Shown piece by piece: positions 6,831-62,849 of a DNA stretch of 64,000 nucleotides. The notes beneath the pieces are model-generated. The model was not told where the DNA came from and did not search any database. It was given only the letters and a program-made list of their open reading frames with translations. A program made the position numbers and the translations under genes. The stretch lies in IMG/VR virus record IMGVR_UViG_3300045999_010033, positions 157,096-221,095 of that record; one strand, written 5' to 3'. The first letter of the stretch is position 1; the number at the start of each line of letters is the position of its first letter.

Positions 6831-6890
6831 TTAGGTATATACCTTTAGTTAGTAATAGAATATGCTATATAGCACTTACTAACATAAATA

Positions 6891-7175
6891 TTAAAACTCC
6901 CCTAAATCAATTACATTTCCATAAAGACTACCCGATATAATTGGGTCAGATGGTGCGTTTGAACCGGATTGCATCCATATCATAGCAGGAACTACTGAAC
7001 CCGATTCCGAATCCAAGCTAGCCGATATATCGTATGAGGTTGCATCTACAACCGCAATTGCACCACTAACAATAAGAGAATATTGGTCATCGGTTAAAGT
7101 GGTGATAGTTACATTTTTAAGTGTGGCTCCATCCAAATCTAATTCAAGTTGTTTTGTTCTTATTCTTGTGGCCAT
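6891..7175 (-). CDS. Hypothetical virion/fibre-associated protein (94 aa)
   Basis: ORF track; SGS-rich like the fibre and immediately upstream of it. Confidence 0.6.
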   Translation of the reverse strand: MATRIRTKQLELDLDGATLKNVTITTLTDDQYSLIVSGAIAVVDATSYDISASLDSESGSVVPAMIWMQSGSNAPSDPIISGSLYGNVIDLGEF

Positions 7176-7176
7176 T

Positions 7177-7830
7177 TTATACGGGTTTTATTTTTCCAAA
7201 TATTTTAATATCTTGTGGTGGAACTCTATTATCTATTAACCAATAATCGTTAATTTTTATTTCAATATTAGAGCCACTTTGACTTATACTAAATATTCCC
7301 GGCATATGCAATCCATCAATAAATACTTCAAAGTTTTCAGGGCCGATGGTTTCCGTACCATAATCTAATGTTCTATTATTTATGATTAATCTATTTAATA
7401 CGGACTCATCTGCGGTGGCAGGTGTTTTATCTATCACACTTGCACTAACATAAATATATCTTGCACTATATTGTAGGATTTCTTTATGAAAGTCGTTTGT
7501 TATGTTATTGGTAAAAATATATGTAGTCGGCGATTCTGACACTTTTGTATTTGCCTGAAATGCTTTTGGTGCAGAAATCCCATCATTAATAATTTCTTGA
7601 ATACTTCCGGTTGCCGAATTTAAATTAGGTACATTATTTATATTTACTTTTGAAACCGATTGTTTCAATTTTTTTGTATTGGCTTGAAAATTTTTTGGTG
7701 AAGCAATGCCATCATTAATAATTTCTTGAATACTTGCAGTTGCAGAAAGTACATCTGGCAAATTATTAAAATTTATCTTTGATACAACTCGATTGAGTTT
7801 TTTTGTATTCGATGTGAATCGGTTAAGCAT
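7177..7830 (-). CDS. Hypothetical structural protein with tandem 43-aa repeat
   Basis: NTKKL...SIQEIINDGI..PK.FQA occurs twice, 129 nt apart. Confidence 0.65.
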   Translation of the reverse strand: MLNRFTSNTKKLNRVVSKINFNNLPDVLSATASIQEIINDGIASPKNFQANTKKLKQSVSKVNINNVPNLNSATGSIQEIINDGISAPKAFQANTKVSESPTTYIFTNNITNDFHKEILQYSARYIYVSASVIDKTPATADESVLNRLIINNRTLDYGTETIGPENFEVFIDGLHMPGIFSISQSGSNIEIKINDYWLIDNRVPPQDIKIFGKIKPV

Positions 7831-8152
7831 ATTTTTCTAAGTCTCCTCCAACTACAATTTCATCCAAAGTATCTAATGGATATTCAAATCTTGATTTAAT
7901 AAATTTAACTAAAAGTCCATCCGATGCCATTTCAGTAATATAATCTCTTGGATTGATATTTTGTGTATTAATTCTTATTCTTAATCGGTCTTGCTTAGTA
8001 CGATATTCTACCTCTCGTAATATTGGTGCAAACCGCCAACCTTTTGCAATCCAAATCCAATATGTAGAATCATTTAAATTATATGGAGTTAGAATTACTC
8101 TTGGAACATTTCGACTAATTACGTTTGTAATATCTAAAAGTGTTCGTTTCAT
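7823..8152 (-). CDS. Hypothetical neck-region protein (109 aa)
   Basis: ORF overlaps both neighbours; resembles the C-terminal domain of the 8149-9246 protein. Confidence 0.6.
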   Translation of the reverse strand: MKRTLLDITNVISRNVPRVILTPYNLNDSTYWIWIAKGWRFAPILREVEYRTKQDRLRIRINTQNINPRDYITEMASDGLLVKFIKSRFEYPLDTLDEIVVGGDLEKYA

Positions 8153-9246
8153 ATCAATTCAATATATTTTCCGGTTATTGTTACTTCATCAGTATTTACA
8201 ACATTCCATCCCAAAGTTATATTATTGAATGTAACCGTTAATGTACTTCCACTCATAGAATATGTATAATGTGTAGTTTCGTAATATCTGACACCATTTA
8301 TGTATATTTTTATATCGTATTGCGTCGCTATTACCGATGAAAATGCTGCGGGTGTTTTTATTAATTTTACATTTGTCAAATTAAATATATTATCCGAAAC
8401 ATAATTCATAAAATCCGAACTATTTAACGATAGATAATCCACAAGGTCTTTATTATCGTAGTATGGTGATTGTGTAGTGAGCATTGCTTCTAATCTGCCA
8501 TCTGCTGTCAAATCCGTTTCAGATGTAACAACCACACGATTAATTGATTGAGATTTCCTCGTTGTATTTTCTGATGCGAATTTTTCAGGTAGAAGATATG
8601 CCTTTACACTTAATGTAAACTCTAATCTATTTATGCGTTCTTGATTATCATTTACTTCATTTACTACATTGTAATCCGCAACACTGGCATAAAACTTAAA
8701 TCGGGCCTTATCACCCCAATATTCATCTGATGCGAAGTTTAATGCCTCAATTACAACGTTCATATGTTCGGTAAAACTTGTCCATGCCATGCAATCGTAG
8801 TTTACTTCGACATAATCCGGCATAGTTATATTATATAAATCATAAGCAGGAGTTATGCCATTTAGAATACTAAACCTGTCGTATCGGTTTCTTTTACTCC
8901 ACTTTGTTACGGTTGAATATGATACGTGTCTATTAAGCATTGGTATTGCATCATTTTTGGCAACAGTTGTCCTTCGTATCATCATTATAGGTAGCTGTAT
9001 TCTACCTTTATTATCTCTATATATACCCTGACGTCTTGCTCCATTCCATCTTTCAGAATTACCATAAATTACTGGTATCTTTATATTTGTATTTTGTGAA
9101 TCGGATAGATTTGGCAATGCCACATCTTCTAAATATGACATGATGGCGTAATCTACATCATATAGAGTTACCGATGGGTTAATATCCCCACCTTCCCATT
9201 TTCTTTGAAGTATTCTATCTGATTGTCTTAGTGGATTCTCTGCCAT
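8149..9246 (-). CDS. Tail terminator/sheath stabiliser (T4 gp15-like) with C-terminal extension
   Basis: KIPVIYG..ERW...LPIMMI, PDYVEVNYD and FTLSVKAYLLP motifs; follows the gp13/gp14-like genes. Confidence 0.6.
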   Translation of the reverse strand: MAENPLRQSDRILQRKWEGGDINPSVTLYDVDYAIMSYLEDVALPNLSDSQNTNIKIPVIYGNSERWNGARRQGIYRDNKGRIQLPIMMIRRTTVAKNDAIPMLNRHVSYSTVTKWSKRNRYDRFSILNGITPAYDLYNITMPDYVEVNYDCMAWTSFTEHMNVVIEALNFASDEYWGDKARFKFYASVADYNVVNEVNDNQERINRLEFTLSVKAYLLPEKFASENTTRKSQSINRVVVTSETDLTADGRLEAMLTTQSPYYDNKDLVDYLSLNSSDFMNYVSDNIFNLTNVKLIKTPAAFSSVIATQYDIKIYINGVRYYETTHYTYSMSGSTLTVTFNNITLGWNVVNTDEVTITGKYIELI

Positions 9247-9701
9247 TATTCAATTCTTTTTTCTATGTTAAGATCACTTATTCTACTCATAAATGCGGTA
9301 CACACAATACTGTAATTGTTATACTCCTGTCCTCCTATGAATTGAACTTCATTTGTATTATTGATTTCGTAATAAGATGTATCAAAATAAATGAAATCAC
9401 CAACTTCGGGATATATTCCTTTTTCTTGACACCTTTCTCTATCCAACTTGAATGTTATGGTTTGTGTAGTATCTGGTCCAAATCCTTCGTATGTTCTTTC
9501 AATACCATCTTTATCAATTAGGGCGTATATGGATACTCCACGATAGTATGTTTTATCAAGAGATTCACCATACAAGTTTACCTTTGATTGATAGATATTA
9601 AGTTTGTAGAGTATTATTTCAACTTGTATTACTTCATCTACCAACTCTCTAGCAATCCCTCTAAAAAATGTTACGTCACGTGGAGATATGAATTTTGGCA
9701 T
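9246..9701 (-). CDS. Neck/head-closure protein (T4 gp14-like)
   Basis: NLYGES..K, YPEVGDFIYF, YYEI motifs; synteny. Confidence 0.65.
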   Translation of the reverse strand: MPKFISPRDVTFFRGIARELVDEVIQVEIILYKLNIYQSKVNLYGESLDKTYYRGVSIYALIDKDGIERTYEGFGPDTTQTITFKLDRERCQEKGIYPEVGDFIYFDTSYYEINNTNEVQFIGGQEYNNYSIVCTAFMSRISDLNIEKRIE

Positions 9702-9702
9702 T

Positions 9703-10890
9703 TCAACCTATATAAATTGTGAGTGGAATTTTTTTCAACATCTCTTGATGGTAATCGGCTTCGTTCTTTTTATATTCAAATTGCTTTGTACGTCCGAGTT
9801 CATCTAAATTTTCGCGTAGTTGAGTGATTAGTGTATCCTTTTCGGTTTGAGCTTCGGAACGAAGTGCCGCACCATCAAGTGATACTTCACCATCGGGTAT
9901 CGGAATTGTACTATATTTTTCACGAATAGCACCAAGTAATTCTTTAGCAAGGGCTAATGTGTATTTTCGTATCCATTGTTTTCCAACATCGTTTATGGAA
10001 TCATATGAAATAAAATCATATTTAATATCCGAATAGTCCGATACCTTATTATCTTTTATAGTTATCGCGTTTTTATCAAATTCATTACTTGAAAAATATT
10101 CAAAATAAATTCGTTTTGGGGTTCGAACCGTTGGGATTGGAAATACTTTTATTTTATCATTTACAATATTAAAAGTATATGCAGATTTACGAATTTGGTC
10201 GTTTAACTCAATGTGTTGAATTCTAAGTGCATCCTCAAATAGTGGCATCAATAGGAATTGTGCCGCAGGTGAATACTGTCCAAATCCAAATTCATCCAAT
10301 AAGTTTAGAGTACCTTGCGCACCAACTGAATATGGGTCAAAGAATCTTTGTATCGCAGGTGTTGATTCAAAAAATACTTTTGTAATTTCAAATTTAGATG
10401 CCGTGTTGAATAGAGTTGAAAACGATTGTGATGTGGCAGCATCCTTTGCCAATGAGGCGATATCGTATTCTTGCTTACCTACTTCCATATCAATATACGC
10501 CTTCTTAATATCCGTGTCACCACCAACATACGCAAGTGTTCCATATGCCTGCGACATTCTGAATATCGTAGGAACAAATGAGCCATCTACAAGTGTCTGA
10601 CTAAAGTTTTTGTTTTCTGATTTCGGATAACCACGGAGTATATTTAGATTATTTCTTATATTAAATTGATTAACTTGTGCCGAATATTCCGAAACGGCTT
10701 CTTCAAAGCAGGCATAAAATTGTGTATCTATCATTTCGATATCAACTGTTGGATATCCAAGACGAGTTGCACACCAAACTGCAGTTCTGGGTCCATCGGT
10801 TTGAAAATCCGCATCTGCATCATACAATGCGTATGGGGTTGAACCTGATATTGCCGAACCTGAACCGGGCCATTTTACGTTAAGAGACAT
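9703..10890 (-). CDS. Neck/adaptor protein (T4 gp13-like)
   Basis: RLGYPTVDIEM..Q, WIRKYTLALAKELLG..R.KY..P.G.V.LDG, C-terminal P..IYIG. Confidence 0.8.
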   Translation of the reverse strand: MSLNVKWPGSGSAISGSTPYALYDADADFQTDGPRTAVWCATRLGYPTVDIEMIDTQFYACFEEAVSEYSAQVNQFNIRNNLNILRGYPKSENKNFSQTLVDGSFVPTIFRMSQAYGTLAYVGGDTDIKKAYIDMEVGKQEYDIASLAKDAATSQSFSTLFNTASKFEITKVFFESTPAIQRFFDPYSVGAQGTLNLLDEFGFGQYSPAAQFLLMPLFEDALRIQHIELNDQIRKSAYTFNIVNDKIKVFPIPTVRTPKRIYFEYFSSNEFDKNAITIKDNKVSDYSDIKYDFISYDSINDVGKQWIRKYTLALAKELLGAIREKYSTIPIPDGEVSLDGAALRSEAQTEKDTLITQLRENLDELGRTKQFEYKKNEADYHQEMLKKIPLTIYIG

Positions 10891-10904: not shown

Positions 10905-10914
10905 TATAAATATA
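10905..10914 (-). promoter_or_regulatory. Representative copy of the recurrent ATATTTAT(A) upstream motif (candidate late promoter)
   Basis: Copies at 6884, 10905, 13919, 16971, 19070, 23550, 30805, 34829, 39626, 40828, 42764, 54726, 58113, 61951 and 62835, all just upstream of gene starts. Confidence 0.7.
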
Positions 10915-10946
10915 AAAAATAAAAAAGGGGAGAATTAATCTCCCCT
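10915..10946 (-). terminator. Intrinsic terminator after major capsid gene
   Basis: Sense GGGGAGA-TTAAT-TCTCCCC followed by TTTTTTATTTTT. Confidence 0.8.
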
Positions 10947-10974
10947 AATTTATTTTTGGTTATCTAATCGGTGA

Positions 10975-12609
10975 TTAGAGAGTATGTAGACCCTCAACCA
11001 CAATCTTGCCATAGAATTCCGGACGGACTATCTTCTTAGCGTATCTCGTCATAACTCCACGACGTGGTGTGAAGTTAGTCGGGTCATACACAAGCGGAGT
11101 CATAATCAAAGGCACATATGGTGCGTAGACAGCTCCAGTTTCGAAGAAGTTAGAACCTTTGAAACCAAGAAGGATAACGTTCTCAGTCATGTATGGGTTT
11201 TTGTAAACATCATACCTGTTAGAGATTGAACCTACATTGGTTACACCAGCTGCAAATTGAAGAGCATCTTTACCAGGGTTAGCTGAGAAGCCATTCATTG
11301 ATTCGAGGATAGTACATACATCCGGGCTAGCCACGATGAAGTTTGCACCACCACGCATTGTCAACTGATGGATTTTGTTTGATACCTTTTGAAGTTTGAT
11401 ACCAAGTGTTTGATACCAAGTGTTCTTTTGGTAAGCGTTTGCAGATATAGTAGCAGAATCAGGTGCGAAAAGACCGGTTGTTGAATTGTAGTCGTATCCT
11501 ACTCTTGCAGACCAGTAATCAGTAGTCAATGCGTTAGCCTGAAGCATCTCAAGAATTTCCAAATCAATCTCAAGAGAGATGTATTCAGAAAGCATCTGAG
11601 TCAATTCAGCTTCTGCGTCGATACTGTGGTATGCGTTAAGGTCTTGCGCCAATTCAGGAGTCCAAACTGCTTTCAACTTACGAGTTTTAGCAACGATTGG
11701 TTCTGATTTGAGTTCAAGCTCAATTTCAGGAATACCAACATCAGCACCAGTTCTATCTTCAAAATCACCTCTTGAAGTAGCGGTTGGTTGTTTGTGATAA
11801 GATACTGTTGCAGTTGCACCATCGGAAAGGAATGCAGCAGTAGATCCAGTTACAAAGAATTCAACAAAGTTTCCGTTGATATTTGTGTATTGTGGATATA
11901 GTGTGACAGAGCCAGATGTAAGTACAAACGCTCTAACACCATTGAAATCCATTTCGGAAAGAATTGATGAAGATACTGCTACCTTCTTAATACCACCTGC
12001 TGCAACGGATGCTGAAAGTGCGTTTGAATAATCGGTATCTGCCCAAGATGCACTTGTTACAGTTACTCCTGCACCTATACTTCCTGTACCGATTGTTACA
12101 CTAACATCGTTGATGGAATATCCGAAACGACCAGGGCCATAAAGACCTTCTTCTGCTACTTGAGTAGAACCAAGTTTGTTACCTGCAGGTGAAAGAGAAT
12201 CTTTACCAACGGTACCACCTTTACCGAACATTGAAGAACCAGAGAATGCTGGCTTACCTGCTTGGTCGGTTGAATACTTGAAGTCCATGTAGAAGATAAG
12301 ACCTGAAGGTAAGTTCATCGGCTGTACAGAAACGAATTCTTTTGCAGCGATGCTACCAAAGATACGTCTTACAAGCGGAAGAGCTACACCTGCCCATTCT
12401 TCAGAACCAGCTGCGAAGCCAGTCTTTGTTGCTTCATCAAGAAGCTGCTTAGCTTGGTTTTCAAGCAATACTGCCATACCATGCTTTTGTGATTCAGAAC
12501 CTGCTCCTTCAAGAAGGCCTGTTTTTTCCCATTTGGATTTCAAACCCCTAGTTTGCTCAAGCATAATGCTTTGCGGGTTTGCACCATTCATTAATTTTTT
12601 TAAGTCCAT
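10975..12609 (-). CDS. Major capsid protein (T4 gp23-like), 544 aa
   Basis: AVLLENQ, VSVQPMNLPSGLIF, AKTRKLKAVWTPELAQDLNAYHSIDAEAEL, YAPYVPL, F.PRRGVMTRYA. Start reassigned to ATG at 12609 (MDLKKLM). Confidence 0.95.
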   Translation of the reverse strand: MDLKKLMNGANPQSIMLEQTRGLKSKWEKTGLLEGAGSESQKHGMAVLLENQAKQLLDEATKTGFAAGSEEWAGVALPLVRRIFGSIAAKEFVSVQPMNLPSGLIFYMDFKYSTDQAGKPAFSGSSMFGKGGTVGKDSLSPAGNKLGSTQVAEEGLYGPGRFGYSINDVSVTIGTGSIGAGVTVTSASWADTDYSNALSASVAAGGIKKVAVSSSILSEMDFNGVRAFVLTSGSVTLYPQYTNINGNFVEFFVTGSTAAFLSDGATATVSYHKQPTATSRGDFEDRTGADVGIPEIELELKSEPIVAKTRKLKAVWTPELAQDLNAYHSIDAEAELTQMLSEYISLEIDLEILEMLQANALTTDYWSARVGYDYNSTTGLFAPDSATISANAYQKNTWYQTLGIKLQKVSNKIHQLTMRGGANFIVASPDVCTILESMNGFSANPGKDALQFAAGVTNVGSISNRYDVYKNPYMTENVILLGFKGSNFFETGAVYAPYVPLIMTPLVYDPTNFTPRRGVMTRYAKKIVRPEFYGKIVVEGLHTL

Positions 12610-12628
12610 TTTGTTTTGTTTTGTTTTA

Positions 12629-13777
12629 TTACTTAATAATACCAGCCAACTTCTTAAATCTATTTGCGAAGTCAGCATTTTCAGAAATTACTTGCTTTTG
12701 TTGAGCAGCGGTAGGTTTTGTTGATTTAACCGCTCTACTTGCAATACCTTCAGCGATAGCCTTTTTAGCAACTTTAGATACTGATGTGTACTTAAAGTTT
12801 TCTGCCAATGTAGAATATACTAATTTGACTTCTCTAACTGATTTTGTTCTATCCAAAGTTTCGATAACTTTAACCTTTTGCTCGTTGGTCATGTTATGTG
12901 CTCTGAACAATTTGTTTGCGAAAAGAAGTTTAGCGTTTAGAAGATTTACTTCATTGATAGTGCCCTGAAGTGATTTGATTGCCTTGTATGCTTGGTTAAG
13001 TTCGGATTTCAACTTTTTGTTTTCTTCCACTTTCTTTTCCATTTCATCATCATCTGCATCGGTCATATCAGCTTCCATTTCACGAAGAATTTCTTCTAAG
13101 TCAATGGTATCATCATCTTTTGCAGTATCATCTTCATCTTCTTCACTAACAACTACTTTTGGGTCTTCACCTTTATCGGTGCCGGCCTCTTCACCATCGG
13201 CTAGGGATTCCATAGCCATCTGGTCATCATCTTCATCTTCAGTTGATTCTTCTTCTGCGAGTGATGATTCCAATTCTCTAATGATTGATTCAAGATCCAT
13301 ATCATCTTCATCATCATACGCTTCTTCTTCATCTCCGGTGATTTCGTATTCCTCATCATTATCGGAATCAGTGTCATCGTCACCGAAATCCATATCATCG
13401 TCGCCGAAATCCATATCATCGGTATCATCTGTGTCTTCTTCTTCAGTAAGATCTTTTACTTTAGAATAGTCATCAAGTTCAGAACCGGGTTCGCCGGATT
13501 CGGTTTCAGTAGAACCACCTTCGAATTCGGTATCGGCATCATAACCCGAAGGTTCTTTCATGTCACCTGCACCGATTTCAGATGAATCTAATTCCTCGGT
13601 CTTCATTTCTTCTTCATCATCGCTCATTTCGGCTTCTGCTCTCAATTTTTGAGATAGAATTGATTGGAGGCGTGGAGTGAAGGCTTCTTCAAGAGCGAGT
13701 TTAGCATTTGCCAAAGCAGTTTCTTTAACGGCTTTAGCATCAGCAATTGCTTGCTTTAACAATTTTGAATTTGCCAT
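12629..13777 (-). CDS. Prohead scaffolding/core protein (gp22-like role)
   Basis: Highly acidic centre, coiled-coil C-terminus (INEVNLLNAKLLF), directly upstream of the capsid gene. Confidence 0.75.
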   Translation of the reverse strand: MANSKLLKQAIADAKAVKETALANAKLALEEAFTPRLQSILSQKLRAEAEMSDDEEEMKTEELDSSEIGAGDMKEPSGYDADTEFEGGSTETESGEPGSELDDYSKVKDLTEEEDTDDTDDMDFGDDDMDFGDDDTDSDNDEEYEITGDEEEAYDDEDDMDLESIIRELESSLAEEESTEDEDDDQMAMESLADGEEAGTDKGEDPKVVVSEEDEDDTAKDDDTIDLEEILREMEADMTDADDDEMEKKVEENKKLKSELNQAYKAIKSLQGTINEVNLLNAKLLFANKLFRAHNMTNEQKVKVIETLDRTKSVREVKLVYSTLAENFKYTSVSKVAKKAIAEGIASRAVKSTKPTAAQQKQVISENADFANRFKKLAGIIK

Positions 13778-13955
13778 AATTTTTTACTTTTTTGATTTGT
13801 GAAGTTATTGTAGGGGAACTTCAATAGAATTTAGTTAGTTGTTCGGTCACCACTTATAGGGAAGGGTATTCATTAACTAACGAAGTTTAATCACATAATA
13901 AAAAATGTGATATTTGAGTATAAATATCACATTTTATAAAAAACATAAAATTAAT

Positions 13956-16678: not shown

Positions 16679-16951
16679 TTAGTTAACAACTATATCCCAA
16701 TACTTAGAAGTTTCTTTTTTTGGCATTGATGTGTTTGTATATTTTGGACTAAGACTGTATATACGACGTCCTCCATTAATAGTACGAGAATATGTATAGT
16801 ATTTCGGATTTGGTAGATCATTTGTTCCATCAACTTCAAGTGGTAGCATGCCTCGTTTACGTCTTTGCCTATGTAGCGGATTATGCTTTTCGGCTTCATT
16901 CAGTTTTTGTATTCTATTAGGAATGAGTTTCATTAATTGCATGCTAATCAT
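16679..16951 (-). CDS. Small basic putative head protein (KLNE|A site)
   Basis: ORF 19 nt downstream of an ATATTTATA motif. Confidence 0.5.
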   Translation of the reverse strand: MISMQLMKLIPNRIQKLNEAEKHNPLHRQRRKRGMLPLEVDGTNDLPNPKYYTYSRTINGGRRIYSLSPKYTNTSMPKKETSKYWDIVVN

Positions 16952-16982
16952 TTTATTTTTCTTTATATAGTATAAATATACG

Positions 16983-17573
16983 TTAGTTCAATTCAACAAT
17001 TATTTCACGCATTAGGTCTTGTGCTTTACACCACTTACCACATTCGTCTGCAATTTTCTGCCATTGCTTACTCTCATTCATTGGTGCCATAAATGCTCCA
17101 TGCGTAGACGGGTTCGATACGAAGTCCCAGCCAACCAATTCGAAGTCGTCTTGCACCATTACCGTGCCATCCCTTTGCTCATTAACTGAACCAAGTCCAC
17201 GTGAACTAATACCAAGACGTATATTATTTTTAAGCAATTCTTTTAAGATATTGCCCGATGGTGTTGAAAGAATTTCTACCACTCCACAAACATCATCCCC
17301 TTCCCACCATATTTCACGAATATTGTGTGATACATTTTTAAGCTCGATTACTGGAGAATCCGGATGGTCTAATTCACCAAGTGCACGTCTTTCCTTAATC
17401 AATTGCTTATATTTTTCACACTCACGCTCTAATATCTCTTTTGGATAACGGCGATTGTTTTGATTGGGTGCACCTGCTCTTTGCAAAACGCCTTTAACAA
17501 GAAAAGTACCATTAGATTCTTCTTTGAGTTTTGCTTCGAATAGGTGGGTTTCTATTAATAGTTTTTTATTCAT
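16983..17573 (-). CDS. Prohead maturation protease (T4 gp21-like)
   Basis: NNRRYP, ALGELDHP, NVSH, LGISSRGLGS, DFVSNPST motifs. Confidence 0.93.
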   Translation of the reverse strand: MNKKLLIETHLFEAKLKEESNGTFLVKGVLQRAGAPNQNNRRYPKEILERECEKYKQLIKERRALGELDHPDSPVIELKNVSHNIREIWWEGDDVCGVVEILSTPSGNILKELLKNNIRLGISSRGLGSVNEQRDGTVMVQDDFELVGWDFVSNPSTHGAFMAPMNESKQWQKIADECGKWCKAQDLMREIIVELN

Positions 17574-17781: not shown

Positions 17782-18192
17782 TTATTCTGATATTTTTCTA
17801 ATATGTTGTTCTAACTTAATCAACCTTTCTTTTATTTTCAAAATGTTTCCATTTGTACGTTTCCAAAATTGGTCATTAGATACTCCGTTTTCTTGCTTCA
17901 ATTTACCATACCAATTTAGAAATTTTTCCATTTCTGCCAATTGCTTATTGATGTTAGAAACGCCTTTACCGATTTTTCGGTGAGCAGGGATATCTTCATT
18001 TTTTAGTTCTAACCAACGATTTTCTTTTACAACGGTATACCCAGTTAGGTCAGCTTGTTGTTTCGCACTTTGCTTTGTATCTCCTCTTTTTTTGAATGCG
18101 TTTGGTGACTGGTATCCTTGAACGTTCCCTGTCACATTCATTTCTCTTACAACCTTTCTTATAAATTCTTTTAATTTACTTTTGTGTTGCAT
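17782..18192 (-). CDS. Hypothetical head-associated protein
   Basis: VVRE|MNVTGNVQGYQSPNAF and VKE|NRW sites. Confidence 0.55.
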   Translation of the reverse strand: MQHKSKLKEFIRKVVREMNVTGNVQGYQSPNAFKKRGDTKQSAKQQADLTGYTVVKENRWLELKNEDIPAHRKIGKGVSNINKQLAEMEKFLNWYGKLKQENGVSNDQFWKRTNGNILKIKERLIKLEQHIRKISE

Positions 18193-19048
18193 TTTTCAAT
18201 TCTTTTATTAGTTCGTATGCCATCATAAGCGCGGATACGTGTTGCTCTTTAACACGTTTATTCTGCTTTATTTTTTTTATCTGCCCTATCGTTTCTACTA
18301 ATTTTATTTTTGTAACTTTATCGGTAATCTTCTTTCCAATTTCATTTAGGGATTGTGTAATTTTATTTACTTCACTTTGAATGTGATTTGAAAAGCCGGA
18401 ACTATTAGTCATTCCATTAATATATTCTCGTAGTAAAACCTTTTGCTCATTACTTAGGTCTTTATACTTTGTATTAAAACTTTCTATTAAAATTTTATAC
18501 GAAAGAGCCCTTACAGTTTCATCTTGTTTTTTGAATTGTTCCAATACGGCATCTTTTATTTTTGCATCTTTATTCTGTATTGATTTATTTATTATGTTTT
18601 CTGCAATTGTAAATCTTGAAGATACCACATCGGTTGGATCTAAAATTTCGGATTCATTTATTGATTCAAAAATTTTATAAATTGATGCAAGAACTTTGTA
18701 GTTTGAAACCGATGATTTTAATAAATCTTCTATATTATACGATTCTCTTATTTTTTTTACTAAATTATATTTTTCTTTTGTCAATTTAGCTTCATCAAGA
18801 CGTTTGCGTGCTTCACAAACGGTATCAATAAACTTTTCTGCTTTTGCTTCAGAATTATATTTTTCGTTTATAAGATACTGATATAATTTTAATTCTTTTG
18901 AAAGTTCTTTTTTAGAATTAAAAAATTCTTGTAGGATTTTTTCTGCTTTAGATTTATTTTCCGACATAATTTCGGAGGTGATTTGTCTAAGCAGTAATTC
19001 AAAAATGAATCCTGTATTTTTGAACTTAGAATGTTTAATTTTTTTCAT
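18176..19048 (-). CDS. Hypothetical helical protein downstream of portal
   Basis: ATG 19048 MKKIKHSKFKNTGFIFELL; preceded by ATATTTATA motif. Confidence 0.65.
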   Translation of the reverse strand: MKKIKHSKFKNTGFIFELLLRQITSEIMSENKSKAEKILQEFFNSKKELSKELKLYQYLINEKYNSEAKAEKFIDTVCEARKRLDEAKLTKEKYNLVKKIRESYNIEDLLKSSVSNYKVLASIYKIFESINESEILDPTDVVSSRFTIAENIINKSIQNKDAKIKDAVLEQFKKQDETVRALSYKILIESFNTKYKDLSNEQKVLLREYINGMTNSSGFSNHIQSEVNKITQSLNEIGKKITDKVTKIKLVETIGQIKKIKQNKRVKEQHVSALMMAYELIKELKNATQK

Positions 19049-19087
19049 CAAAGGGATAATTTATCTCTTTATAAATATATTTATTGA

Positions 19088-20836: not shown

Positions 20837-20865
20837 AGTTAATCTTTATTATATATATACTATTT

Positions 20866-22859: not shown

Positions 22860-23200
22860 GTCGGCGGATTATATTTTTTATCACTTCCCTTTTTATCCCA
22901 ACTAACTCTTACTGGCTTTTTACCTTTACTGCCATCACCTTTATCGCCACGTCCTGCTTTGTTTTGTTTTGCACGTTTACGTCTTACGAAACTTGCTCTA
23001 CCTTTTTTTCCAAGCTTTTTTGCCGCTGCCGATGAAAGACATGCCGCATATGCTTCACCTTCTTCGCCGGCTCCACACTTTCCAACACGTTTACCACTGG
23101 AATCATATCTATCCCAGCCACCACCTCCTTTACCTCCCCATTTGCCCTTTCCGAACCACTTACGGAGGTCTTCGTCTAAAAGGTCAAATAGTTTAATCAT
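22856..23200 (-). CDS. Basic Gly/Lys-rich putative internal head protein (MIKLFDLLDE leader)
   Basis: DLRKWFGKG...KCG...ACL...FVRRKR; very basic after the leader. Confidence 0.65.
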   Translation of the reverse strand: MIKLFDLLDEDLRKWFGKGKWGGKGGGGWDRYDSSGKRVGKCGAGEEGEAYAACLSSAAAKKLGKKGRASFVRRKRAKQNKAGRGDKGDGSKGKKPVRVSWDKKGSDKKYNPPT

Positions 23201-23523
23201 TAGAATACGGAATTGATTTGAGATGAAACCTCTTTACCATACTTTGATTGACATTGTTTCATCAATTCATTATAGATATTTGTTCTCAAATCTATAAGCT
23301 CTTTTGGAGTATGTCCAAACTCTTTCTGCATATCCAACATACTATTCAAAATGTTTTCAAATGCTCCCATTTTCATAAATTTGGCGAACTCAAGTACCGC
23401 TTCGGTATGCGCATTTCTATCGGTTAATTTTTCTATCTTTTTAACGATAGGGTCTACATTGATCGCTTCTTTTAATCCGGTAACTACCTTTGTTTCTGAT
23501 AGTATATTAGTTAGTTTAATCAT
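23200..23523 (-). CDS. Putative internal head protein (MIKLTNILSE leader)
   Basis: Leader plus a second LKE|A site; first gene after an ATATTTATA motif. Confidence 0.65.
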   Translation of the reverse strand: MIKLTNILSETKVVTGLKEAINVDPIVKKIEKLTDRNAHTEAVLEFAKFMKMGAFENILNSMLDMQKEFGHTPKELIDLRTNIYNELMKQCQSKYGKEVSSQINSVF

Positions 23524-23562
23524 GCTATTTTATTTTAAGTGTTTCAATCTATAAATATACAA

Positions 23563-30800: not shown

Positions 30801-30871
30801 ATTAATAAATATCTTTTTTTATTGAAATATTATTATTACTATTTTTTTAATCGAACATACGAAATTTTTTT

Positions 30872-34813: not shown

Positions 34814-34859
34814 TAAAGAATATTTTTTTATAAATATTCCTAAAACTGATTATATATCT

Positions 34860-38945: not shown

Positions 38946-38976
38946 CAAATATACAAAAAGTATTTTGTATTTCAAA
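38946..38976 (-). promoter_or_regulatory. Bacteroidota-type housekeeping promoter (-33 TTTG, 19-nt spacer, -7 TATATTTG) for primase/SbcDC
   Basis: Exact match to TTTG-N19-TAnnTTTG. Confidence 0.7.
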
Positions 38977-39611: not shown

Positions 39612-39637
39612 ATTGTTTTGTTTTATATAAATATAAG

Positions 39638-40822: not shown

Positions 40823-40845
40823 ACAACTATAAATATTCCTAAACT

Positions 40846-42743: not shown

Positions 42744-42792
42744 AGTGTATTGTTATCTTTTGTTATAAATATATTATTCTAAAAAATAAGTA

Positions 42793-53761: not shown

Positions 53762-54199
53762 TTATCCGTTTACGTTTATTGTTACTGAATCTCTTATAGC
53801 AGGATTAGATGTCAATGAAAATTGTAATTCAAGGTTTACTCTATGATTATCAATATCGTTTTCATCATAATCAAATAATATTTGGTCTACATTTATATAT
53901 GGTAACCAAATGTTTACTGCTTCTGTTACTGTTCTTTCTATTTCTGCATCAATTTGCCCCTCAATAATTGGTTCAAAAAGTATCCTCCATATATCACATC
54001 CAAATTCGGGTTGCATTACGCGTTCACCTTTTTTTGTTAGGATTAGATTAATCAAATTATATTTTACTTGAGATAGAGTAGTATAATTCACAGCAAAAAC
54101 ACCATTGCTATTCGATGTTTGGTTTATGGATATCCCTAACGATTTGTAATCGTTTTCGGAAAGGTCTTGTACACTTACTCTACCAAGTTCTATTGCCAT
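53762..54199 (-). CDS. Baseplate wedge/sheath initiator (T4 gp25-like)
   Basis: NLINLILTKKGERVMQPEFGC..LFEP..WLPYI. Confidence 0.9.
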   Translation of the reverse strand: MAIELGRVSVQDLSENDYKSLGISINQTSNSNGVFAVNYTTLSQVKYNLINLILTKKGERVMQPEFGCDIWRILFEPIIEGQIDAEIERTVTEAVNIWLPYINVDQILFDYDENDIDNHRVNLELQFSLTSNPAIRDSVTINVNG

Positions 54200-54711
54200 T
54201 ATTTAAATCTTTTAACTAACTCAGTGTAATCTCTAGTCAATGCTTTTGCTACAATATCGACTGCTTCATTACCAGTGCTTTCAACCGTCACTTGTGGTGC
54301 CGGTTGATAATTCATATTTTTTGTGGAAAGATTTATCTCTCCCCAACCATTTTCCGAATCTCTATGGATAGCATCTAAAACTGACCCACCCATCATTCCG
54401 GCTAATCCACCACCATCACGTCTTTGATCTGCGGTAAATGGTGTAGTTGAATTTAGAATTTCGTTAAGCATAGGATCTTTTGATAAAGTTCTTTGCTTAG
54501 TATTACTTCTATTAATTCCAACCGATGGAGAAGAAGCAGTTTGTTTTTTTACACTAGATTTTATAGTTTCATTCGTATTTGACTTTTTATTTATTGCCGG
54601 AACTAATACTCCTGATTTAATAAGTTTAGCTACTTCTTCTTTTACTTGTTGTTTTACTTCATTTTTTACAACCTCTTTAATAAGAGTTATTAATACATCC
54701 GATTTAGACAT
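54199..54711 (-). CDS. Hypothetical protein
   Basis: LIKEVVKNEV, DPMLNEILNST, ALTRDYTELVK; preceded by ATATTTATA. Confidence 0.55.
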   Translation of the reverse strand: MSKSDVLITLIKEVVKNEVKQQVKEEVAKLIKSGVLVPAINKKSNTNETIKSSVKKQTASSPSVGINRSNTKQRTLSKDPMLNEILNSTTPFTADQRRDGGGLAGMMGGSVLDAIHRDSENGWGEINLSTKNMNYQPAPQVTVESTGNEAVDIVAKALTRDYTELVKRFK

Positions 54712-54779
54712 AGTTTTTTCTTTTTTATAAATATTGAAAGAAAAAGTTTACTTATAAAACCTTTTTACCAATATTGATT

Positions 54780-57645: not shown

Positions 57646-58050
57646 TTAAAATTTTGATTTTATTTCATCAATTTCTATTTCCAAATCAATTAACTTTTCT
57701 TTACTATCCCTTTCCATTTCGGAAACGGTATGTTCTATTTCGGAAAGTAATTGAGATTTTTCTGCTTCAGATAAATAACCTTCTTGTCCTTTTTGTTTTC
57801 CTGCAGCTGCTGCTAATCTCTGTGCAATGGTTGCTAACTTAATTAGATGATCATCATTCTTTACTGAGACTTCAATAAGGTCTTTTACTATCGGTGCAAT
57901 TACTGCTGCCTCTCCCACGTTTTTAATTAATTTTCGTAAGGATTCGATGAGTTCTGAAATGTTCTTCTTTTTATTTACTTGGTTTGTGTAAATATCTTGA
58001 AAAACATCAGATAGAGTTTTGCCGGGAAACAATTGAAAATCTACTGACAT
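57646..58050 (-). CDS. Hypothetical helical protein (possibly small terminase-like)
   Basis: Helical and acidic C-terminus; own ATATTTAT motif. The TerS idea is speculation. Confidence 0.45.
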   Translation of the reverse strand: MSVDFQLFPGKTLSDVFQDIYTNQVNKKKNISELIESLRKLIKNVGEAAVIAPIVKDLIEVSVKNDDHLIKLATIAQRLAAAAGKQKGQEGYLSEAEKSQLLSEIEHTVSEMERDSKEKLIDLEIEIDEIKSKF

Positions 58051-58135
58051 TTATTTTTATTTTTAATTACGTGTGAAATATATTCTTTATCCTAAATAGG
58101 ATACTCACACAAATAAATATAGTTAATCAATAAAC

Positions 58136-58828
58136 TTACATTTTAATATCACCCGTATCTTGATATTCGTTAAATAACTCCATTTGTTTCTGTCGCATTT
58201 TGTTTACCACTTTTGTAATATAATGAGTGGGGCAACCGGTCATTTCTCTAACTAAAAGATATAGACTTTTCTTATTGAAATTTTCTATGTATTCGGCACG
58301 ACGGAACAATTCCAATACTGAATCTGCAATTTGAATATCACGTTTTTTCTGAAAATATGTTTCTAAATTCTTATCCCAATAAGCTAGCATTAACCTATTA
58401 AATACCTTATATTCGGAATCTTTAACCTCATCGTGAAAATTATTTTCTACATCCCATTGTTCGGGCATTTTGGAGATTATATCGGTATCTTTGTACCTTT
58501 TGTAATTAGAATTGTTATTCAATATAAGGTAGTTTCTCGCTACAATTGTAAAGTAACTATACGCCTTTCCTTTATTAGGGTCATTGTACATATGGATTTT
58601 CTCTACCATAAACGCAACAACCTGCGACATAACATCTTCCGGCTCATCATCGAAATATGTAAACTTCCATTTATTGTAAACAATTTCGGCAAGCTTTTCA
58701 AATGATTGCTGGATTCTTTCTTTGTAGATTCTATCTCTAATTTCTTTTTCTGAAGCCGTATTATATTCCAATATGGCGTTCTCCGTGTCTTTTGTGAAGT
58801 ATTCTCTTACTACTTTTTTTCTTGGCAT
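58136..58828 (-). CDS. Phage sigma factor-like protein (gp55-like late sigma)
   Basis: YFTKD..AILEYN, KLAE, YNDPNKGKAYSYFTIVARNYL resembles sigma region 2 of gp55 homologues. Confidence 0.65.
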   Translation of the reverse strand: MPRKKVVREYFTKDTENAILEYNTASEKEIRDRIYKERIQQSFEKLAEIVYNKWKFTYFDDEPEDVMSQVVAFMVEKIHMYNDPNKGKAYSYFTIVARNYLILNNNSNYKRYKDTDIISKMPEQWDVENNFHDEVKDSEYKVFNRLMLAYWDKNLETYFQKKRDIQIADSVLELFRRAEYIENFNKKSLYLLVREMTGCPTHYITKVVNKMRQKQMELFNEYQDTGDIKM

Positions 58829-58830
58829 AT

Positions 58831-59094
58831 TTATTCGAAGTTTTTGTAATCTTCTATTAACTCCTTTATGCCTTGAAAGGTTGATCCAACGTCATCATCT
58901 TTTTCAAAGATTTGACGAGAATCAATCTCTCTCATTTTCTCCAGCAGTTGCTCATATGCCAAAGCCTTCTTAGAAAGAAATTCATCGTATGATTCGAATA
59001 TATCTTCGTATACTTCTAATTTAGAAAATAGATTCCAAATCAAATACAATGAGGCAATAAGGAATATAGAAAGTATAAAAATTATTATTTCCAT
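58831..59094 (-). CDS. Small membrane-anchored hypothetical protein
   Basis: N-terminal TM helix; FEKDDDVG. Confidence 0.55.
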   Translation of the reverse strand: MEIIIFILSIFLIASLYLIWNLFSKLEVYEDIFESYDEFLSKKALAYEQLLEKMREIDSRQIFEKDDDVGSTFQGIKELIEDYKNFE

Positions 59095-59095
59095 T

Positions 59096-60621: not shown

Positions 60622-60637
60622 AATATTAATTATTACC

Positions 60638-60669
60638 TAAATATAACAAAATTTTATCAAAAAACCAAA
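60638..60669 (-). promoter_or_regulatory. Bacteroidota-type promoter (TTTG-N20-TATATTTA) for the uvsE-def-sigma block
   Basis: One mismatch to TAnnTTTG, correct spacer. Confidence 0.55.
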
Positions 60670-60671
60670 TA

Positions 60672-61754
60672 TTAATAATTACCGAGGCCCTTATTGTTCA
60701 TCCAATGGTTGACTGCCTTTTGGTCATTCTGCCAAAGATGTTTTTTATCCCACGGAAACTCAGGATTTGTGTAGTATGGTTGCCCATTGTAAGCATTTAA
60801 CCAATCTTGCTCAGGTTTTTCGTTTTTTTCACTTTCTACCACGTTTTTATACTCATCTGCCGCAGTTTTTAGTGCATCATTCGGAATTGGGGGATTTTCT
60901 AATGTTTCTTCAAGTATTTTTGAATCTTTTTCGGATAAATTTATGATATTATCGTCTTTATCATCACCATAAACCTTAAATACTCTAATTCCATCGTTTG
61001 GAGTTGATTTTTTTTCGGAATTTTGTCTAATTAAGTTATTAAACGCGATGACCAGAGCAATTGCCAATGGGTCAAACACAAAAACTATCAAAAATATGAA
61101 AAATTTTACAACCGAGTTCAAATCTACTCCAAATGCTTCGGCAACAAAACGAAATCCACCCACTTCTCGCTCAATATCTATGTTTGCATTCTTAATTTTG
61201 TTAATAGTATCGTTATATTGTACGATTTCACTTTGCAAAACATCAATTTTTTCAGAAGTTTCGGTGATTTGTCTATCTCTATTATCAACTGAGCGTAAAA
61301 GTCTACTATTCGCGCGATTACCTTGTTGTAAATCAATTATTTTACCCTGATTTTGCTGGAAATTATTTAATTGTGTGTTAAAAATTTCTATTTGTTCTTT
61401 GTTCGTGTTGATTTTTTGCTCCCAAATGGATATTTCACGTTCAACTTGTTGAATTTTTAGGTTTTGCTGTTGAAACGCGTTAGAAAGATATCCAAAAATA
61501 CCCGCTGAAGTTATTATCATTAAGATAACTACGGCCAAAACCAAATAAATTTTTAATACTTTACCAATTGAATCCCAAGATTGTTTTAAATATGACGCTG
61601 CTACCAATTTTGAAAACTCTAACGCAGATGCCATTACCATTACGGCGATTGATGCACCACTGAATAGTATTCCCAAACCGGTTACTGAAAAATATGCAGC
61701 GCAACCAGCTACCACAAAGGCAGCTAACGCCACTAAAAATTTAAGCCAATTCAT
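60672..61754 (-). CDS. Multi-pass membrane protein with coiled coil
   Basis: AAYFSVTGL, LEFSKLV, ITSAGIFGYLS, IVFVFDPLAIAL. Confidence 0.7.
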   Translation of the reverse strand: MNWLKFLVALAAFVVAGCAAYFSVTGLGILFSGASIAVMVMASALEFSKLVAASYLKQSWDSIGKVLKIYLVLAVVILMIITSAGIFGYLSNAFQQQNLKIQQVEREISIWEQKINTNKEQIEIFNTQLNNFQQNQGKIIDLQQGNRANSRLLRSVDNRDRQITETSEKIDVLQSEIVQYNDTINKIKNANIDIEREVGGFRFVAEAFGVDLNSVVKFFIFLIVFVFDPLAIALVIAFNNLIRQNSEKKSTPNDGIRVFKVYGDDKDDNIINLSEKDSKILEETLENPPIPNDALKTAADEYKNVVESEKNEKPEQDWLNAYNGQPYYTNPEFPWDKKHLWQNDQKAVNHWMNNKGLGNY

Positions 61755-61755
61755 T

Positions 61756-61932
61756 TTATCTTTCTATGGATATGAGTTCACTAATTTTTTCTCTGATTCT
61801 TTTACAATCTTCGATAACAAATATAAGGTCATTCGTATCCAATCGCATGCGACCATTCGCCACATTTTCAATTATAGACATTTTAGATTCGAGAGATTCT
61901 AAAAGAGATTCTATTTTATCTTTATAATTCAT
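61756..61932 (-). CDS. Hypothetical protein
   Basis: Likely start MNYKDKIE at 61932, 18 nt after an ATATTTATA motif. Confidence 0.5.
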   Translation of the reverse strand: MNYKDKIESLLESLESKMSIIENVANGRMRLDTNDLIFVIEDCKRIREKISELISIER

Positions 61933-61965
61933 TTGTTTAAAGTTTATAAGTATAAATATCCCCAT

Positions 61966-62003
61966 AAAACAAAAATGGGTGAAGTTTTTCTGACTTCACC
62001 CAT
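61966..62003 (-). terminator. Intrinsic terminator after hsp20
   Basis: Sense ATGGGTGAAGT-CAGAAAA-ACTTCACCCAT followed by TTTTGTTTT. Confidence 0.8.
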
Positions 62004-62025
62004 TAATATAACACTTTTTTGTGAA

Positions 62026-62418
62026 TTAATCAACTTTAATTTCCACACTTTTTGGTTTTGCTTCCTCTTTTTTAGGAATGGTAAGATAGAGAACACCATT
62101 TAAAATCTTTGCTTCGGCTTTTTCTCCATCAAATTTTTTACCTACGGCAATCTTTTCATTAACTTTTGAAATTAATTGCTTTTGGATAGATGTCATTTCC
62201 TTTTCTGCCGATTTTACTACAATAGAATCTTCGTGTAATTCAATTGTAATATCATCTTTAGAGTGTCCTAATACTGATAAAGCAATCTGTGCTTTATCAT
62301 CTAATACTTCAATTGCCAATTTGGAATTTTCGTATTGATATTCAGTTGTAGTAAATATCGTATCGTTAAAAAACGAATCAAAAATCCTATCAAGTGCATC
62401 GTATTTTTTGTAATACAT
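62026..62418 (-). CDS. Small heat-shock protein (Hsp20/alpha-crystallin)
   Basis: LGHSKDDITIEL, AEAKILNGVLYLTIPKKE. Confidence 0.85.
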   Translation of the reverse strand: MYYKKYDALDRIFDSFFNDTIFTTTEYQYENSKLAIEVLDDKAQIALSVLGHSKDDITIELHEDSIVVKSAEKEMTSIQKQLISKVNEKIAVGKKFDGEKAEAKILNGVLYLTIPKKEEAKPKSVEIKVD

Positions 62419-62532
62419 AGTAATTAAGTTTTTAAGGTTATTTAATGCCTATTATAATTCAATTACTATACCAAATAAAAAAGTATGACAATACGTCATA
62501 CTTTTTAAGTTTTACCTGAAATAATTTCTGAA

Positions 62533-62811
62533 TTACTTCTCGTGAAGAGCATCAATTTTAGTAGCTACCTCTGGGTCTTTGTTTGTTAATTGTGCCAATA
62601 TAAGAGCAACTACTGATCCAACCATTACATTTGCATTACCGACGGTTGCAACCCACTCTGGTAATTGTACTGATGTTGTTTGTAGATAAGAAATAATTGC
62701 AGAAACACCACCAGTTACGATGGACAACCATTGGATGGTTACGAAGAACTTAGGTTTTGAAGAAAAAGTTCTCAAAACTAATTCAGAAATAAAAAGTGAA
62801 AGTGCGTTCAT
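62533..62811 (-). CDS. Holin-like two-TM protein
   Basis: Two hydrophobic helices, charged C-terminus, next to NlpC/P60; likely start MNALS at 62811. Confidence 0.5.
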   Translation of the reverse strand: MNALSLFISELVLRTFSSKPKFFVTIQWLSIVTGGVSAIISYLQTTSVQLPEWVATVGNANVMVGSVVALILAQLTNKDPEVATKIDALHEK

Positions 62812-62849
62812 AGTTAAAAGTTTTTGTTTCAATAATAAATATCAGAAAA

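What the first reader, a model, noticed from the sequence alone, without database searches (positions are those of the whole stretch)
6884..62842. Candidate late promoter is the reverse complement of the T4 late promoter
Seen: ATATTTAT(A) in the sense direction (TATAAATAT on the plus strand) lies 4-141 nt upstream of 15 gene starts, mostly heads of structural gene blocks; a variant ATACTTATA is at 63819. No -33 TTTG partner was noticed. Known: T4 gp55 reads TATAAATA in the sense direction, and Bacteroidota sigma reads TAnnTTTG at -7. Inference: the 58136-58828 sigma recognises a motif derived from the host -7 element. Copies only 4-5 nt from the ATG (30800, 40822) would give essentially leaderless mRNAs.
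Basis: partly seen in the sequence, partly recalled or inferred. Interest (0 to 1): 0.6.

Follow-up and report, generated by a model that had tools for sequence, protein, structure and literature searches.

The report
Variant T4-type late promoter, ATATTTATA
A T4-like phage of a Bacteroidota host marks the heads of its late (virion) gene blocks with the box ATATTTATA, most likely read by its own distant relative of the T4 late sigma factor gp55; it is a new variant of a known system and gives a promoter rule for a large uncultured freshwater phage clade.

Summary
The window is the last 64 kb of a 221-kb T4-like myovirus with nearly all genes on the minus strand. Read in the gene direction, ATATTTATA occurs 31 times genome-wide against 4 in the opposite direction. 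Twenty-five copies lie in 17 kb of intergenic DNA, where about 1 is expected. ATATTTAT is the commonest intergenic 8-mer.

In 851 kb from 80 relatives the count is 195 to 5. The box sits a median 25 nt before an ATG and often follows a terminator. It is kept when the flanks and the downstream gene change. There is no -33/-35 partner.

The ORF at 58136-58828 is a sigma factor. Its family profile matches the gp55 family (hhalign E 1.8e-7) and T4 gp55 is its best structural match (Z 9.8). It lacks gp55's clamp-binding tail and carries a possibly sigma-region-4-like domain instead.

"Reverse complement of TATAAATA" is literally true, but the box is better described as TATAAATA with the two central A changed to T, in the same orientation and probably the same register. 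Derivation from the host -7 box is not supported. No transcription start was mapped. Verdict: new variant of a known kind.

The parts
61951..61959 (-). ATATTTATA box after a terminator-like hairpin, 21 nt before a small ORF's ATG, ahead of 60672-61754
54726..54734 (-). ATATTTATA box, 14 nt before the ATG of 54199-54711
42764..42772 (-). ATATTTATA box, 20 nt before the ATG of 42120-42743
40828..40836 (-). ATATTTATA box after a terminator-like hairpin, 5 nt before the ATG of 39638-40822 (candidate leaderless mRNA)
39626..39634 (-). ATATTTATA box, 14 nt before an ATG
34829..34837 (-). ATATTTATA box, 15 nt before the ATG of the 1313-aa tail-fibre-like ORF 30872-34813
23550..23558 (-). ATATTTATA box, 26 nt before the ATG of 23200-23523
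19070..19078 (-). ATATTTATA box, 21 nt before an ATG in 18176-19051, just after the portal gene
16971..16979 (-). ATATTTATA box, 19 nt before the ATG of 16679-16951, just after the prohead protease gene
13919..13927 (-). ATATTTATA box, 141 nt before 12629-13777, heading the block that ends with the major capsid gene
10905..10913 (-). ATATTTATA box directly after the capsid-gene terminator, 14 nt before the ATG of 9703-10890; same layout in 46 of 64 relatives
62834..62842 (-). variant box ATATTTATT, 22 nt before an ATG
58112..58120 (-). variant box ATATTTATT, about 61 nt before 57646-58050, just downstream of the sigma gene
30804..30812 (-). variant box ATATTTATT, 3 nt before the ATG of the 1431-aa ORF 26505-30800; function uncertain
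6883..6891 (-). variant box ATATTTATG, about 52 nt before the 2276-aa ORF that starts at 6830
63819..63827 (-). variant box ATACTTATA, 16 nt before the ATG of 63338-63802; 7 of 8 sense copies of this variant in the genome are intergenic
58136..58828 (-). 230-aa sigma factor: gp55-like region-2 domain (about residues 8-118), long helix, C-terminal four-helix domain (about 160-226)
60638..60669 (-). host-type promoter candidate (TTTGG, 17-nt spacer, GTTATATTTA) heading the four-gene block that ends with the sigma gene
10921..10945 (-). terminator-like hairpin plus T run after the capsid gene, immediately upstream of the box at 10905-10913

Best explanation
ATA(T/C)TTATA, with core TATTTATA, is the late-promoter -10-type element of this T4-like phage of a Bacteroidota host. 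It is read in the direction of the genes.

Proposed cascade:
1. Host sigma-A RNA polymerase reads promoters that carry a -33 TTTG box. One of these, at 60638-60669, heads the block that contains the phage sigma gene (58136-58828).
2. The phage sigma, a remote gp55 homologue, replaces host sigma on the core enzyme.
3. The new holoenzyme opens DNA at TATTTATA, placed at about -13 to -6, with no -35 contact. It starts about 5-6 nt downstream of the box.
4. The resulting mRNAs have leaders of roughly 5 to 30 nt, or in a minority none at all.

Shown here: the enrichment, strand bias, position, conservation across the clade, absence of a -33 box, and the sigma identity of the ORF. Inferred: the timing (late), the pairing of this sigma with this box, the start site and the register.
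For: Enrichment and orientation:
- 31 sense against 4 antisense copies genome-wide.
- 25 intergenic copies against about 1 expected.
- ATATTTAT is the top intergenic 8-mer.

Clade-wide conservation:
- 195 sense against 5 antisense copies in 851 kb from 80 relatives; 158 of the 195 are intergenic.
- Distance to the ATG has a median of 25 nt and an interquartile range of 21-28 nt.
- TATTTATA is still the top upstream 8-mer in phages whose sigma is only 42-61% identical, and in Flavobacterium phage immuto and phage Mel-JY01.

Footprint: after the capsid gene, the order terminator, variable spacer, box, ATG is kept in 46 of 64 relatives even where the next gene differs.

Orientation from terminators: hairpins with a T run lie within 60 nt upstream in 60 of 194 sites and downstream in 3.

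Spacing: the distance to the ATG is bimodal. It is exactly 4-5 nt or at least 11 nt, never 6-10 nt. This is what a start site about 5-6 nt past the box would give, and it matches T4 geometry.

Site distribution: box sites concentrate at 120-221 kb, where the virion genes lie. Host-type TTTG...TAnnTTTG promoters concentrate at 40-60 and 100-120 kb.

The sigma:
- The best PDB sequence hit of the family profile is T4 gp55.
- Profile against the gp55-family profile gives probability 93.8%, E 1.8e-7.
- 6 of 82 family members hit the PHROG late-sigma family and 15 of 82 hit Pfam Sigma70_r2.
- The AlphaFold model (pLDDT 91.9) has gp55 chain 7d7c_F as top match, Z 9.8, and all 50 top entries are sigma factors.
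- No second sigma was found in the genome.

Recognition pockets: T4 gp55 inserts A-12, A-9 and A-8 into pockets (PMC7892883). In the T4 register this box keeps A-12 and A-8 and changes -10 and -9. The aligned residues for -12 (Tyr) and -8 (Ser/Thr) are kept in the family. Those for -9 (invariant Asn13; His95) are replaced.
Against: - No transcription start, timing or binding data exist. The two metatranscriptomes found are assembled contigs from relatives. They only show RNA over the capsid and scaffold genes (10972-13883).
- The window's own sigma gives no direct hit to Pfam, PHROGs or the PDB. Homology rests on profiles and fold.
- The sigma lacks gp55's C-terminal clamp-binding motif, so T4-style clamp activation may not apply.
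- Its extra C-terminal domain could contact DNA or another factor that I did not detect.
- About ten box copies lie in regions otherwise early, so "late" may be too simple.
- The residue-to-base rationalisation depends on a remote alignment. Position 95 is also Phe in 10 of 32 gp55-family members.
Confidence: 0.72

Rival explanations
1. The box is a variant host -7 element (TAtaTTTA resembling TAnnTTTG). Host sigma-A reads it, perhaps helped by a phage activator, and the phage sigma serves other promoters.
For: T precedes the box in 66% of sites, giving TATATTTA, a 7-of-8 fit to TAnnTTTG with its final G changed to A. The host consensus and its position at -12 to -5 come from PMC9723704.
Against: - The G-equivalent position is always A, and the two bases after it (TA) are as fixed as the rest.
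- The first T of the supposed host box is absent in a third of sites.
- There is no -33 TTTG, although genuine host-type promoters in the same genome have one.
- The leaderless class implies a start 7-8 nt after the G-equivalent base, against 5 nt in the host.
- A conserved phage sigma with no other candidate motif would be left without a target.
Confidence: 0.12
2. The boxes are genuine T4-type TATAAATA promoters that fire on the plus strand and give antisense RNAs.
For: The plus strand carries a perfect TATAAATA at each site.
Against: - The plus strand has almost no genes.
- The boxes keep a fixed distance to the ATG of the minus-strand gene.
- They follow minus-sense terminators.
- 48 of 194 sites would send a plus-strand transcript into a terminator-like hairpin within 60 nt.
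- The base after the 8-mer and the downstream G and A preferences are conserved only in the minus-sense reading.
Confidence: 0.03
3. The box is not a promoter. It is an RNA-level or protein-binding signal in 5' leaders, such as a translational operator, a processing site, or the site of a late activator or repressor.
For: The position close to start codons is compatible. Bacteroidota lack Shine-Dalgarno sequences and use A/U-rich leaders (PMC9723704).
Against: - Only about 33 sites serve about 295 genes, and they sit at the heads of blocks and after terminators rather than before each gene.
- The distance to the ATG ranges from 3 to 141 nt.
- A class with only 4-5 nt to the ATG leaves no room for the box inside a leader unless transcription starts upstream of it. 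Yet the box often directly abuts a terminator T run.
Confidence: 0.08
4. The pattern is a by-product of AT-rich intergenic DNA.
For: The pooled two-strand window test is only borderline: 12 copies against 4.2 expected, 1 of 100 shuffles.
Against: Intergenic-specific Markov models of orders 1-3 give about 1 expected against 25 observed, and the mirror orientation is not enriched. The ratio in relatives is 195 to 5.
Confidence: 0.01

Closest known systems
Phage T4 late transcription (gp55 sigma, TATAAATA at -13 to -6, gp33, gp45 sliding clamp)
   Same: - T4-like virion and replication genes.
- A single 8-9 bp A/T-only box with no -35 element, close to the start codons of late genes.
- A sigma whose region-2 domain is homologous to gp55 (E 1.8e-7; Z 9.8).
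- 6 of 8 box positions identical in the same orientation, including the two adenines that gp55 buries deepest (-12, -8).
   Different: - The central AA is TT, and an extra upstream A (often TA) is fixed.
- The sigma is 230 aa rather than 185.
- It lacks the C-terminal clamp-binding motif and has a four-helix domain that may be region-4-like.
- No gp33 was identified.
- The clamp is only a positional candidate.
Late promoters predicted for other T4-family phages (KVP40, 44RR, S-PM2, Aeh1; review PMC2988020)
   Same: In-silico consensus boxes upstream of late genes, paired with a gp55 homologue.
   Different: Those consensus sequences are the same as T4's or differ at -13/-12. None has the central AA-to-TT change, and I found no paper that reports it.
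Bacteroidota sigma-A promoters (-33 TTTG, -7 TAnnTTTG at -12 to -5)
   Same: TATATTTA resembles TAnnTTTG. The same host RNA polymerase core would be used. Such promoters exist in this genome's early regions.
   Different: The box has no -33 element, A in place of the G, a fixed TA extension, and an implied register 2-3 bp further upstream.

Membership tests
T4-type late transcription system | A gp55-family sigma is encoded by the phage | tested here: met
   The family profile against the gp55-family profile gives probability 93.8%, E 1.8e-7. T4 gp55 is the best PDB sequence hit and the best structural hit, Z 9.8. Six of 82 members hit phrog_234. The window protein itself gives no direct hit.
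T4-type late transcription system | Promoter is TATAAATA in the sense direction at about -10 | tested here: not met
   Sense TATAAATA occurs 4 times in intergenic DNA against 26 for TATTTATA. The box differs at the two central positions.
T4-type late transcription system | No -35 element | tested here: met
   The matrix of 114 sites shows only a T-rich tract upstream and no box.
T4-type late transcription system | The sigma carries a C-terminal sliding-clamp-binding motif | tested here: not met
   T4 gp55 ends in SLDFLYEAND. The window protein ends in a hydrophilic tail after a helical domain.
T4-type late transcription system | gp45 clamp and gp33 co-activator are present | tested here: inconclusive
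   gp44 and gp62 clamp-loader homologues and the polymerase were found. A 237-aa unknown ORF sits at the expected clamp position, but it has no gp45 profile hit. I did not search for gp33.
T4-type late transcription system | Transcription starts about 6 nt downstream of the box, late in infection | not testable with these tools
   The only evidence is indirect: ATGs lie exactly 4-5 nt after the box and never 6-10 nt. The RNA data are contigs without ends.
Sigma-70 family | Region-2 fold | tested here: met
   Fifteen of 82 family members hit Pfam Sigma70_r2. All 50 top structural matches are sigma factors.
Sigma-70 family | Region-4 helix-turn-helix domain | tested here: inconclusive
   The C-terminal domain model (pLDDT 96.4) gave no significant Foldseek hit. 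In the wide structural search the top match is SigA region 4 (Z 6.2, 68 of 69 residues). Eight more sigma factor chains are in the top 50, six aligned on their C-terminal (region-4) part. These Z values are in the range of common helical arrangements.
Bacteroidota sigma-A promoter | -33 TTTG plus -7 TAnnTTTG | tested here: not met
   The box has no -33 element, and the G position is always A.

The most novel reading that the evidence does not exclude
This large, mostly uncultured clade of T4-like phages of Bacteroidota has rewired T4 late transcription in two ways.

1. The gp55-type sigma changed its -9/-10 base specificity (AA to TT) through changes in the pocket formed by Asn13 and His95 in T4.
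2. It exchanged the sliding-clamp tether for a region-4-like domain. Late transcription would then no longer be coupled to replication through the clamp.

In addition, a subset of late mRNAs would be made leaderless by placing the ATG exactly at the start site.
Probability: 0.3. Interest if true: 0.65.

Novelty: new variant of a known kind. Interest (0 to 1): 0.5.

Why it matters
The sigma family has 3350 clusters at 90% identity and 1278 at 50%, almost all labelled hypothetical. The relatives are common in freshwater metagenomes and metatranscriptomes. A validated promoter rule and a named sigma would have three uses:

- Late operons could be annotated across this clade.
- It would offer a natural specificity variant for studying how gp55-type minimal sigmas read DNA.
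- It would provide an orthogonal sigma and promoter pair for Bacteroidota, where expression tools are scarce.

It also raises the question of whether clamp-coupled late transcription is universal in the T4 superfamily.

Tried and rejected
- Direct hits for the sigma ORF in Pfam, PHROGs and PDB sequences: none.
- Pairwise BLAST against T4 gp55: nothing.
- PHROG gp55 and gp45 profiles against the whole genome: nothing.
- Pfam Sigma70_r2 against the genome: nothing.
- A weak Sigma70_r4_2 hit at genome position 76200 turned out to be an HNH endonuclease.
- The RM378 annotated sigma is not detectably related to this family.
- Near-identical phage genomes in GenBank: none.
- I first tried to use the capsid gene's upstream region as a conservation test. 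This failed because the capsid gene follows the scaffold gene directly and its true start is at 12609. I used the region after the capsid gene instead.
- RNA evidence: only two metatranscriptomes with small shares, kept as contigs. They show RNA over the capsid and scaffold genes of relatives but give no ends or strand.
- Foldseek on the C-terminal domain alone: no significant match.
- Literature searches for the box or for promoter work on immuto or Mel-JY01 phages: nothing relevant.
- No plus-strand late genes exist in this genome, so I could not test orientation tracking within it.
Full report
**What the window is.** The window is the last 64 kb of a single 221,095-bp virus record that CheckV rates as complete. 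Nearly every gene is on the minus strand. Pfam and PHROGs identify four T4-type virion genes:
- a major capsid protein (gp23 family, 10975-12678, true start 12609);
- a portal (gp20, 19088-20836);
- a large terminase (23563-25167);
- a prohead protease (16983-17573).

Elsewhere the genome has gp43-, gp44- and gp62-like replication genes. The nearest isolates by capsid protein are Flavobacterium phage vB_FspM_immuto (53% identity), phage Mel-JY01 (54%), an uncultured 484-kb phage, and more distantly Rhodothermus phage RM378. Early regions of the genome carry textbook Bacteroidota promoters of the form TTTG, about 19 nt, TAnnTTTG. The host is therefore almost certainly a member of the Bacteroidota.

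The simple two-strand window test is only borderline, with 12 copies against 4.2 expected. It hides the signal, because the motif is almost confined to one strand and to 8% of the sequence. The finer tests give:
- Genome-wide, the 9-mer occurs 31 times in the sense direction and 4 times in the other.
- Of the sense copies, 25 lie in 17.3 kb of intergenic DNA. Markov models of order 1 to 3 trained on that DNA predict 0.8-1.4 copies and never gave more than 6 in 1000 runs.
- The mirror word is at expectation, 2 against 1.1-1.7.
- In an unbiased count, ATATTTAT is the single most frequent intergenic 8-mer.
- Among one-mismatch variants only ATACTTATA is clearly intergenic (7 of 8 copies). The first three positions tolerate no change.

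**Conservation.** I fetched 80 related loci around the capsid gene (62-80% protein identity, 851 kb).
- They hold 195 sense copies against 5 in the other direction, and 158 of the 195 are intergenic.
- The distance to the next ATG has a median of 25 nt and an interquartile range of 21-28 nt.
- After the capsid gene, 46 of 64 non-identical relatives show the same order: stop codon, GC-rich hairpin with a T run, a spacer of variable length and sequence, the exact 9-mer, then an ATG. This holds even where the next gene is a different one.
- In 80 further loci found with the sigma family profile, TATTTATA is still the top upstream 8-mer where the sigma is only 42-61% identical.
- The same is true in immuto (often preceded by C instead of A) and in Mel-JY01. 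RM378 shows a different but related word, TTATTTAA.

The conserved core is therefore TATTTATA.

**Orientation and position.**
- Terminator-like hairpins with a T run lie within 60 nt upstream of the box, on the gene strand, at 60 of 194 sites. They lie downstream at 3 sites.
- At 48 sites a transcript leaving the box on the opposite strand would meet such a hairpin at once.
- The position matrix of 114 sites shows a T-rich tract upstream, T before the box in 66%, and G four bases after the box in 62%. There is no -33 or -35 box.
- The distance from the box to the ATG is bimodal. A class sits at exactly 4-5 nt and is conserved for one orthologous gene across many relatives. There is nothing at 6-10 nt, and then a broad class from 11 nt upward.

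The simplest reading is that transcription starts 5-6 nt after the box. Genes then either begin exactly at the start site (leaderless) or need a leader of several nucleotides. This is an inference, not a mapped start. It places TATTTATA at about -13/-12 to -6/-5, which is where T4 places TATAAATA (PMC2988020). If instead TATATTTA were aligned to the host box, it would lie 2-3 bp upstream of the host position of -12 to -5 (PMC9723704).

**The sigma.** The ORF at 58136-58828 (230 aa) has no direct hit in Pfam, PHROGs or PDB sequences. It does belong to a very large family, nearly all unnamed: 3350 clusters at 90% identity and 1278 at 50%. Evidence from an 82-member alignment:
- A profile of the alignment finds T4 gp55 as its best PDB hit, E 0.064 over 150 residues.
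- Compared with a profile of 32 gp55-family proteins, hhalign gives probability 93.8% and E 1.8e-7 over 104 columns.
- Six members hit the PHROG late-sigma family and fifteen hit Pfam Sigma70_r2.
- The AlphaFold model (pLDDT 91.9) has gp55 from the T4 open complex as its best structural match (7d7c_F, Z 9.8, 118 residues, rmsd 4.0). All 50 top entries are sigma factors.

No second sigma was found in the genome.

The protein differs from gp55 in its C-terminal third. The clamp-binding tail of gp55 is absent. A confident four-helix domain is present instead (pLDDT 96.4). Its best structural match in the wide search is SigA region 4 (Z 6.2, 68 of 69 residues). Eight more sigma factor chains are among the top 50, six of them aligned on their C-terminal (region-4) part. 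The scores are not high enough to settle the fold.

**A possible basis for the changed box.** The T4 open-complex structure shows that gp55 flips A-12, A-9 and A-8 of the non-template strand into pockets. A-12 stacks on Tyr97, A-9 lies between Asn13 and His95, and A-8 bonds to Thr99 (PMC7892883).

In the T4 register the new box keeps A-12 and A-8 and changes -10 and -9 to T. In two independent profile alignments:
- the residue aligned to Tyr97 is Tyr in 75 of 82 family members;
- the residue aligned to Thr99 is Ser or Thr in 57 of 82;
- Asn13, invariant in the gp55 family, is mostly Thr or Gly;
- His95 is always Phe or Tyr.

This fits a change confined to the -9 pocket. It rests on a remote alignment, and Phe also occurs at position 95 in 10 of 32 gp55 relatives.

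**Cascade.** Box sites are densest at 120-221 kb, where the virion genes lie. Host-type promoters cluster at 40-60 and 100-120 kb. The four-gene block that ends with the sigma gene is headed by a promoter with a -33 box (TTTGG, 17 nt, GTTATATTTA; 60638-60669). This resembles a class, TTTGG then about 17 nt then CGTATATT, that recurs upstream of the sigma gene in relatives. The order this suggests is: host sigma-A makes the phage sigma, which then switches on the ATATTTATA promoters.

**RNA.** Only two freshwater metatranscriptomes held related sequence, both as assembled contigs. They cover the capsid and scaffold genes (10972 to about 13883) and little outside. That agrees with a unit bounded by the box at 13919-13927 and the terminator at 10921-10945. 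Contigs cannot show starts, strand or level, and they come from relatives. I laid 6000 bases.

**Verdict.** The best explanation is a T4-type late promoter with an altered core, read in the gene direction by a remote gp55 homologue (confidence about 0.7).

"Reverse complement of the T4 promoter" is a correct string description that follows from the near-palindromy of TATAAATA. Mechanistically the box is a two-base variant in the same orientation. Derivation from the host -7 box is not supported by the implied register, by the invariant A in place of G, or by the missing -33 box.

I found no publication describing this box or this sigma family. It is a new variant of a known kind, of moderate interest. 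Its most interesting open point is whether the loss of the clamp tether and the gain of a possible region-4 domain uncouple late transcription from replication.

Noticed in passing
window 60638-60669 (minus strand); genome positions 66524 and 71878; loci L086-L102: There is a second promoter class with a -33 box: TTTGG, about 17 nt, then (C)GTATATT. It recurs upstream of the sigma gene in relatives and heads the sigma-containing block in the window. It may be an early or middle class read by host sigma-A.
   Followed up: partly
genome 40-60 kb and 100-120 kb (outside the window); window 38946-38976: Classical Bacteroidota sigma-A promoters (TTTG, about 19 nt, TAnnTTTG) cluster in the presumed early regions. 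This supports a Bacteroidota host.
   Followed up: partly
window 12609 versus 12678: The longest capsid ORF starts 23 codons too early. The start conserved in more than 60 relatives is the ATG at 12609 (MDLKKLM...), directly after the scaffold-like gene.
   Followed up: yes
window 26505-30800: A 1431-aa ORF begins with a cytidylyltransferase domain. It is one of several giant ORFs in the window (2276, 1780, 1313 and 1047 aa) that otherwise have no family match.
   Followed up: no
genome 96.5-102.5 kb (L168): The T4-like replication block runs in this order: gp62-like, gp44-like, dUTPase, a 237-aa unknown ORF (phrog_12062) at the position expected for the sliding clamp, then a gp43-like polymerase. 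The clamp candidate has no gp45 profile hit.
   Followed up: partly
window 20850-20858: ATATATATA, a one-mismatch variant of the box, lies 13 nt before the portal gene's ATG. It may be a weak promoter or chance.
   Followed up: no
window 62026-62418: An Hsp20-like small heat-shock protein gene is present (PHROG hit E 1.4e-5).
   Followed up: no
whole window, leaders of late genes: The leaders are A-rich and lack Shine-Dalgarno sequences, as is usual for Bacteroidota. The box itself contains no G or C.
   Followed up: no
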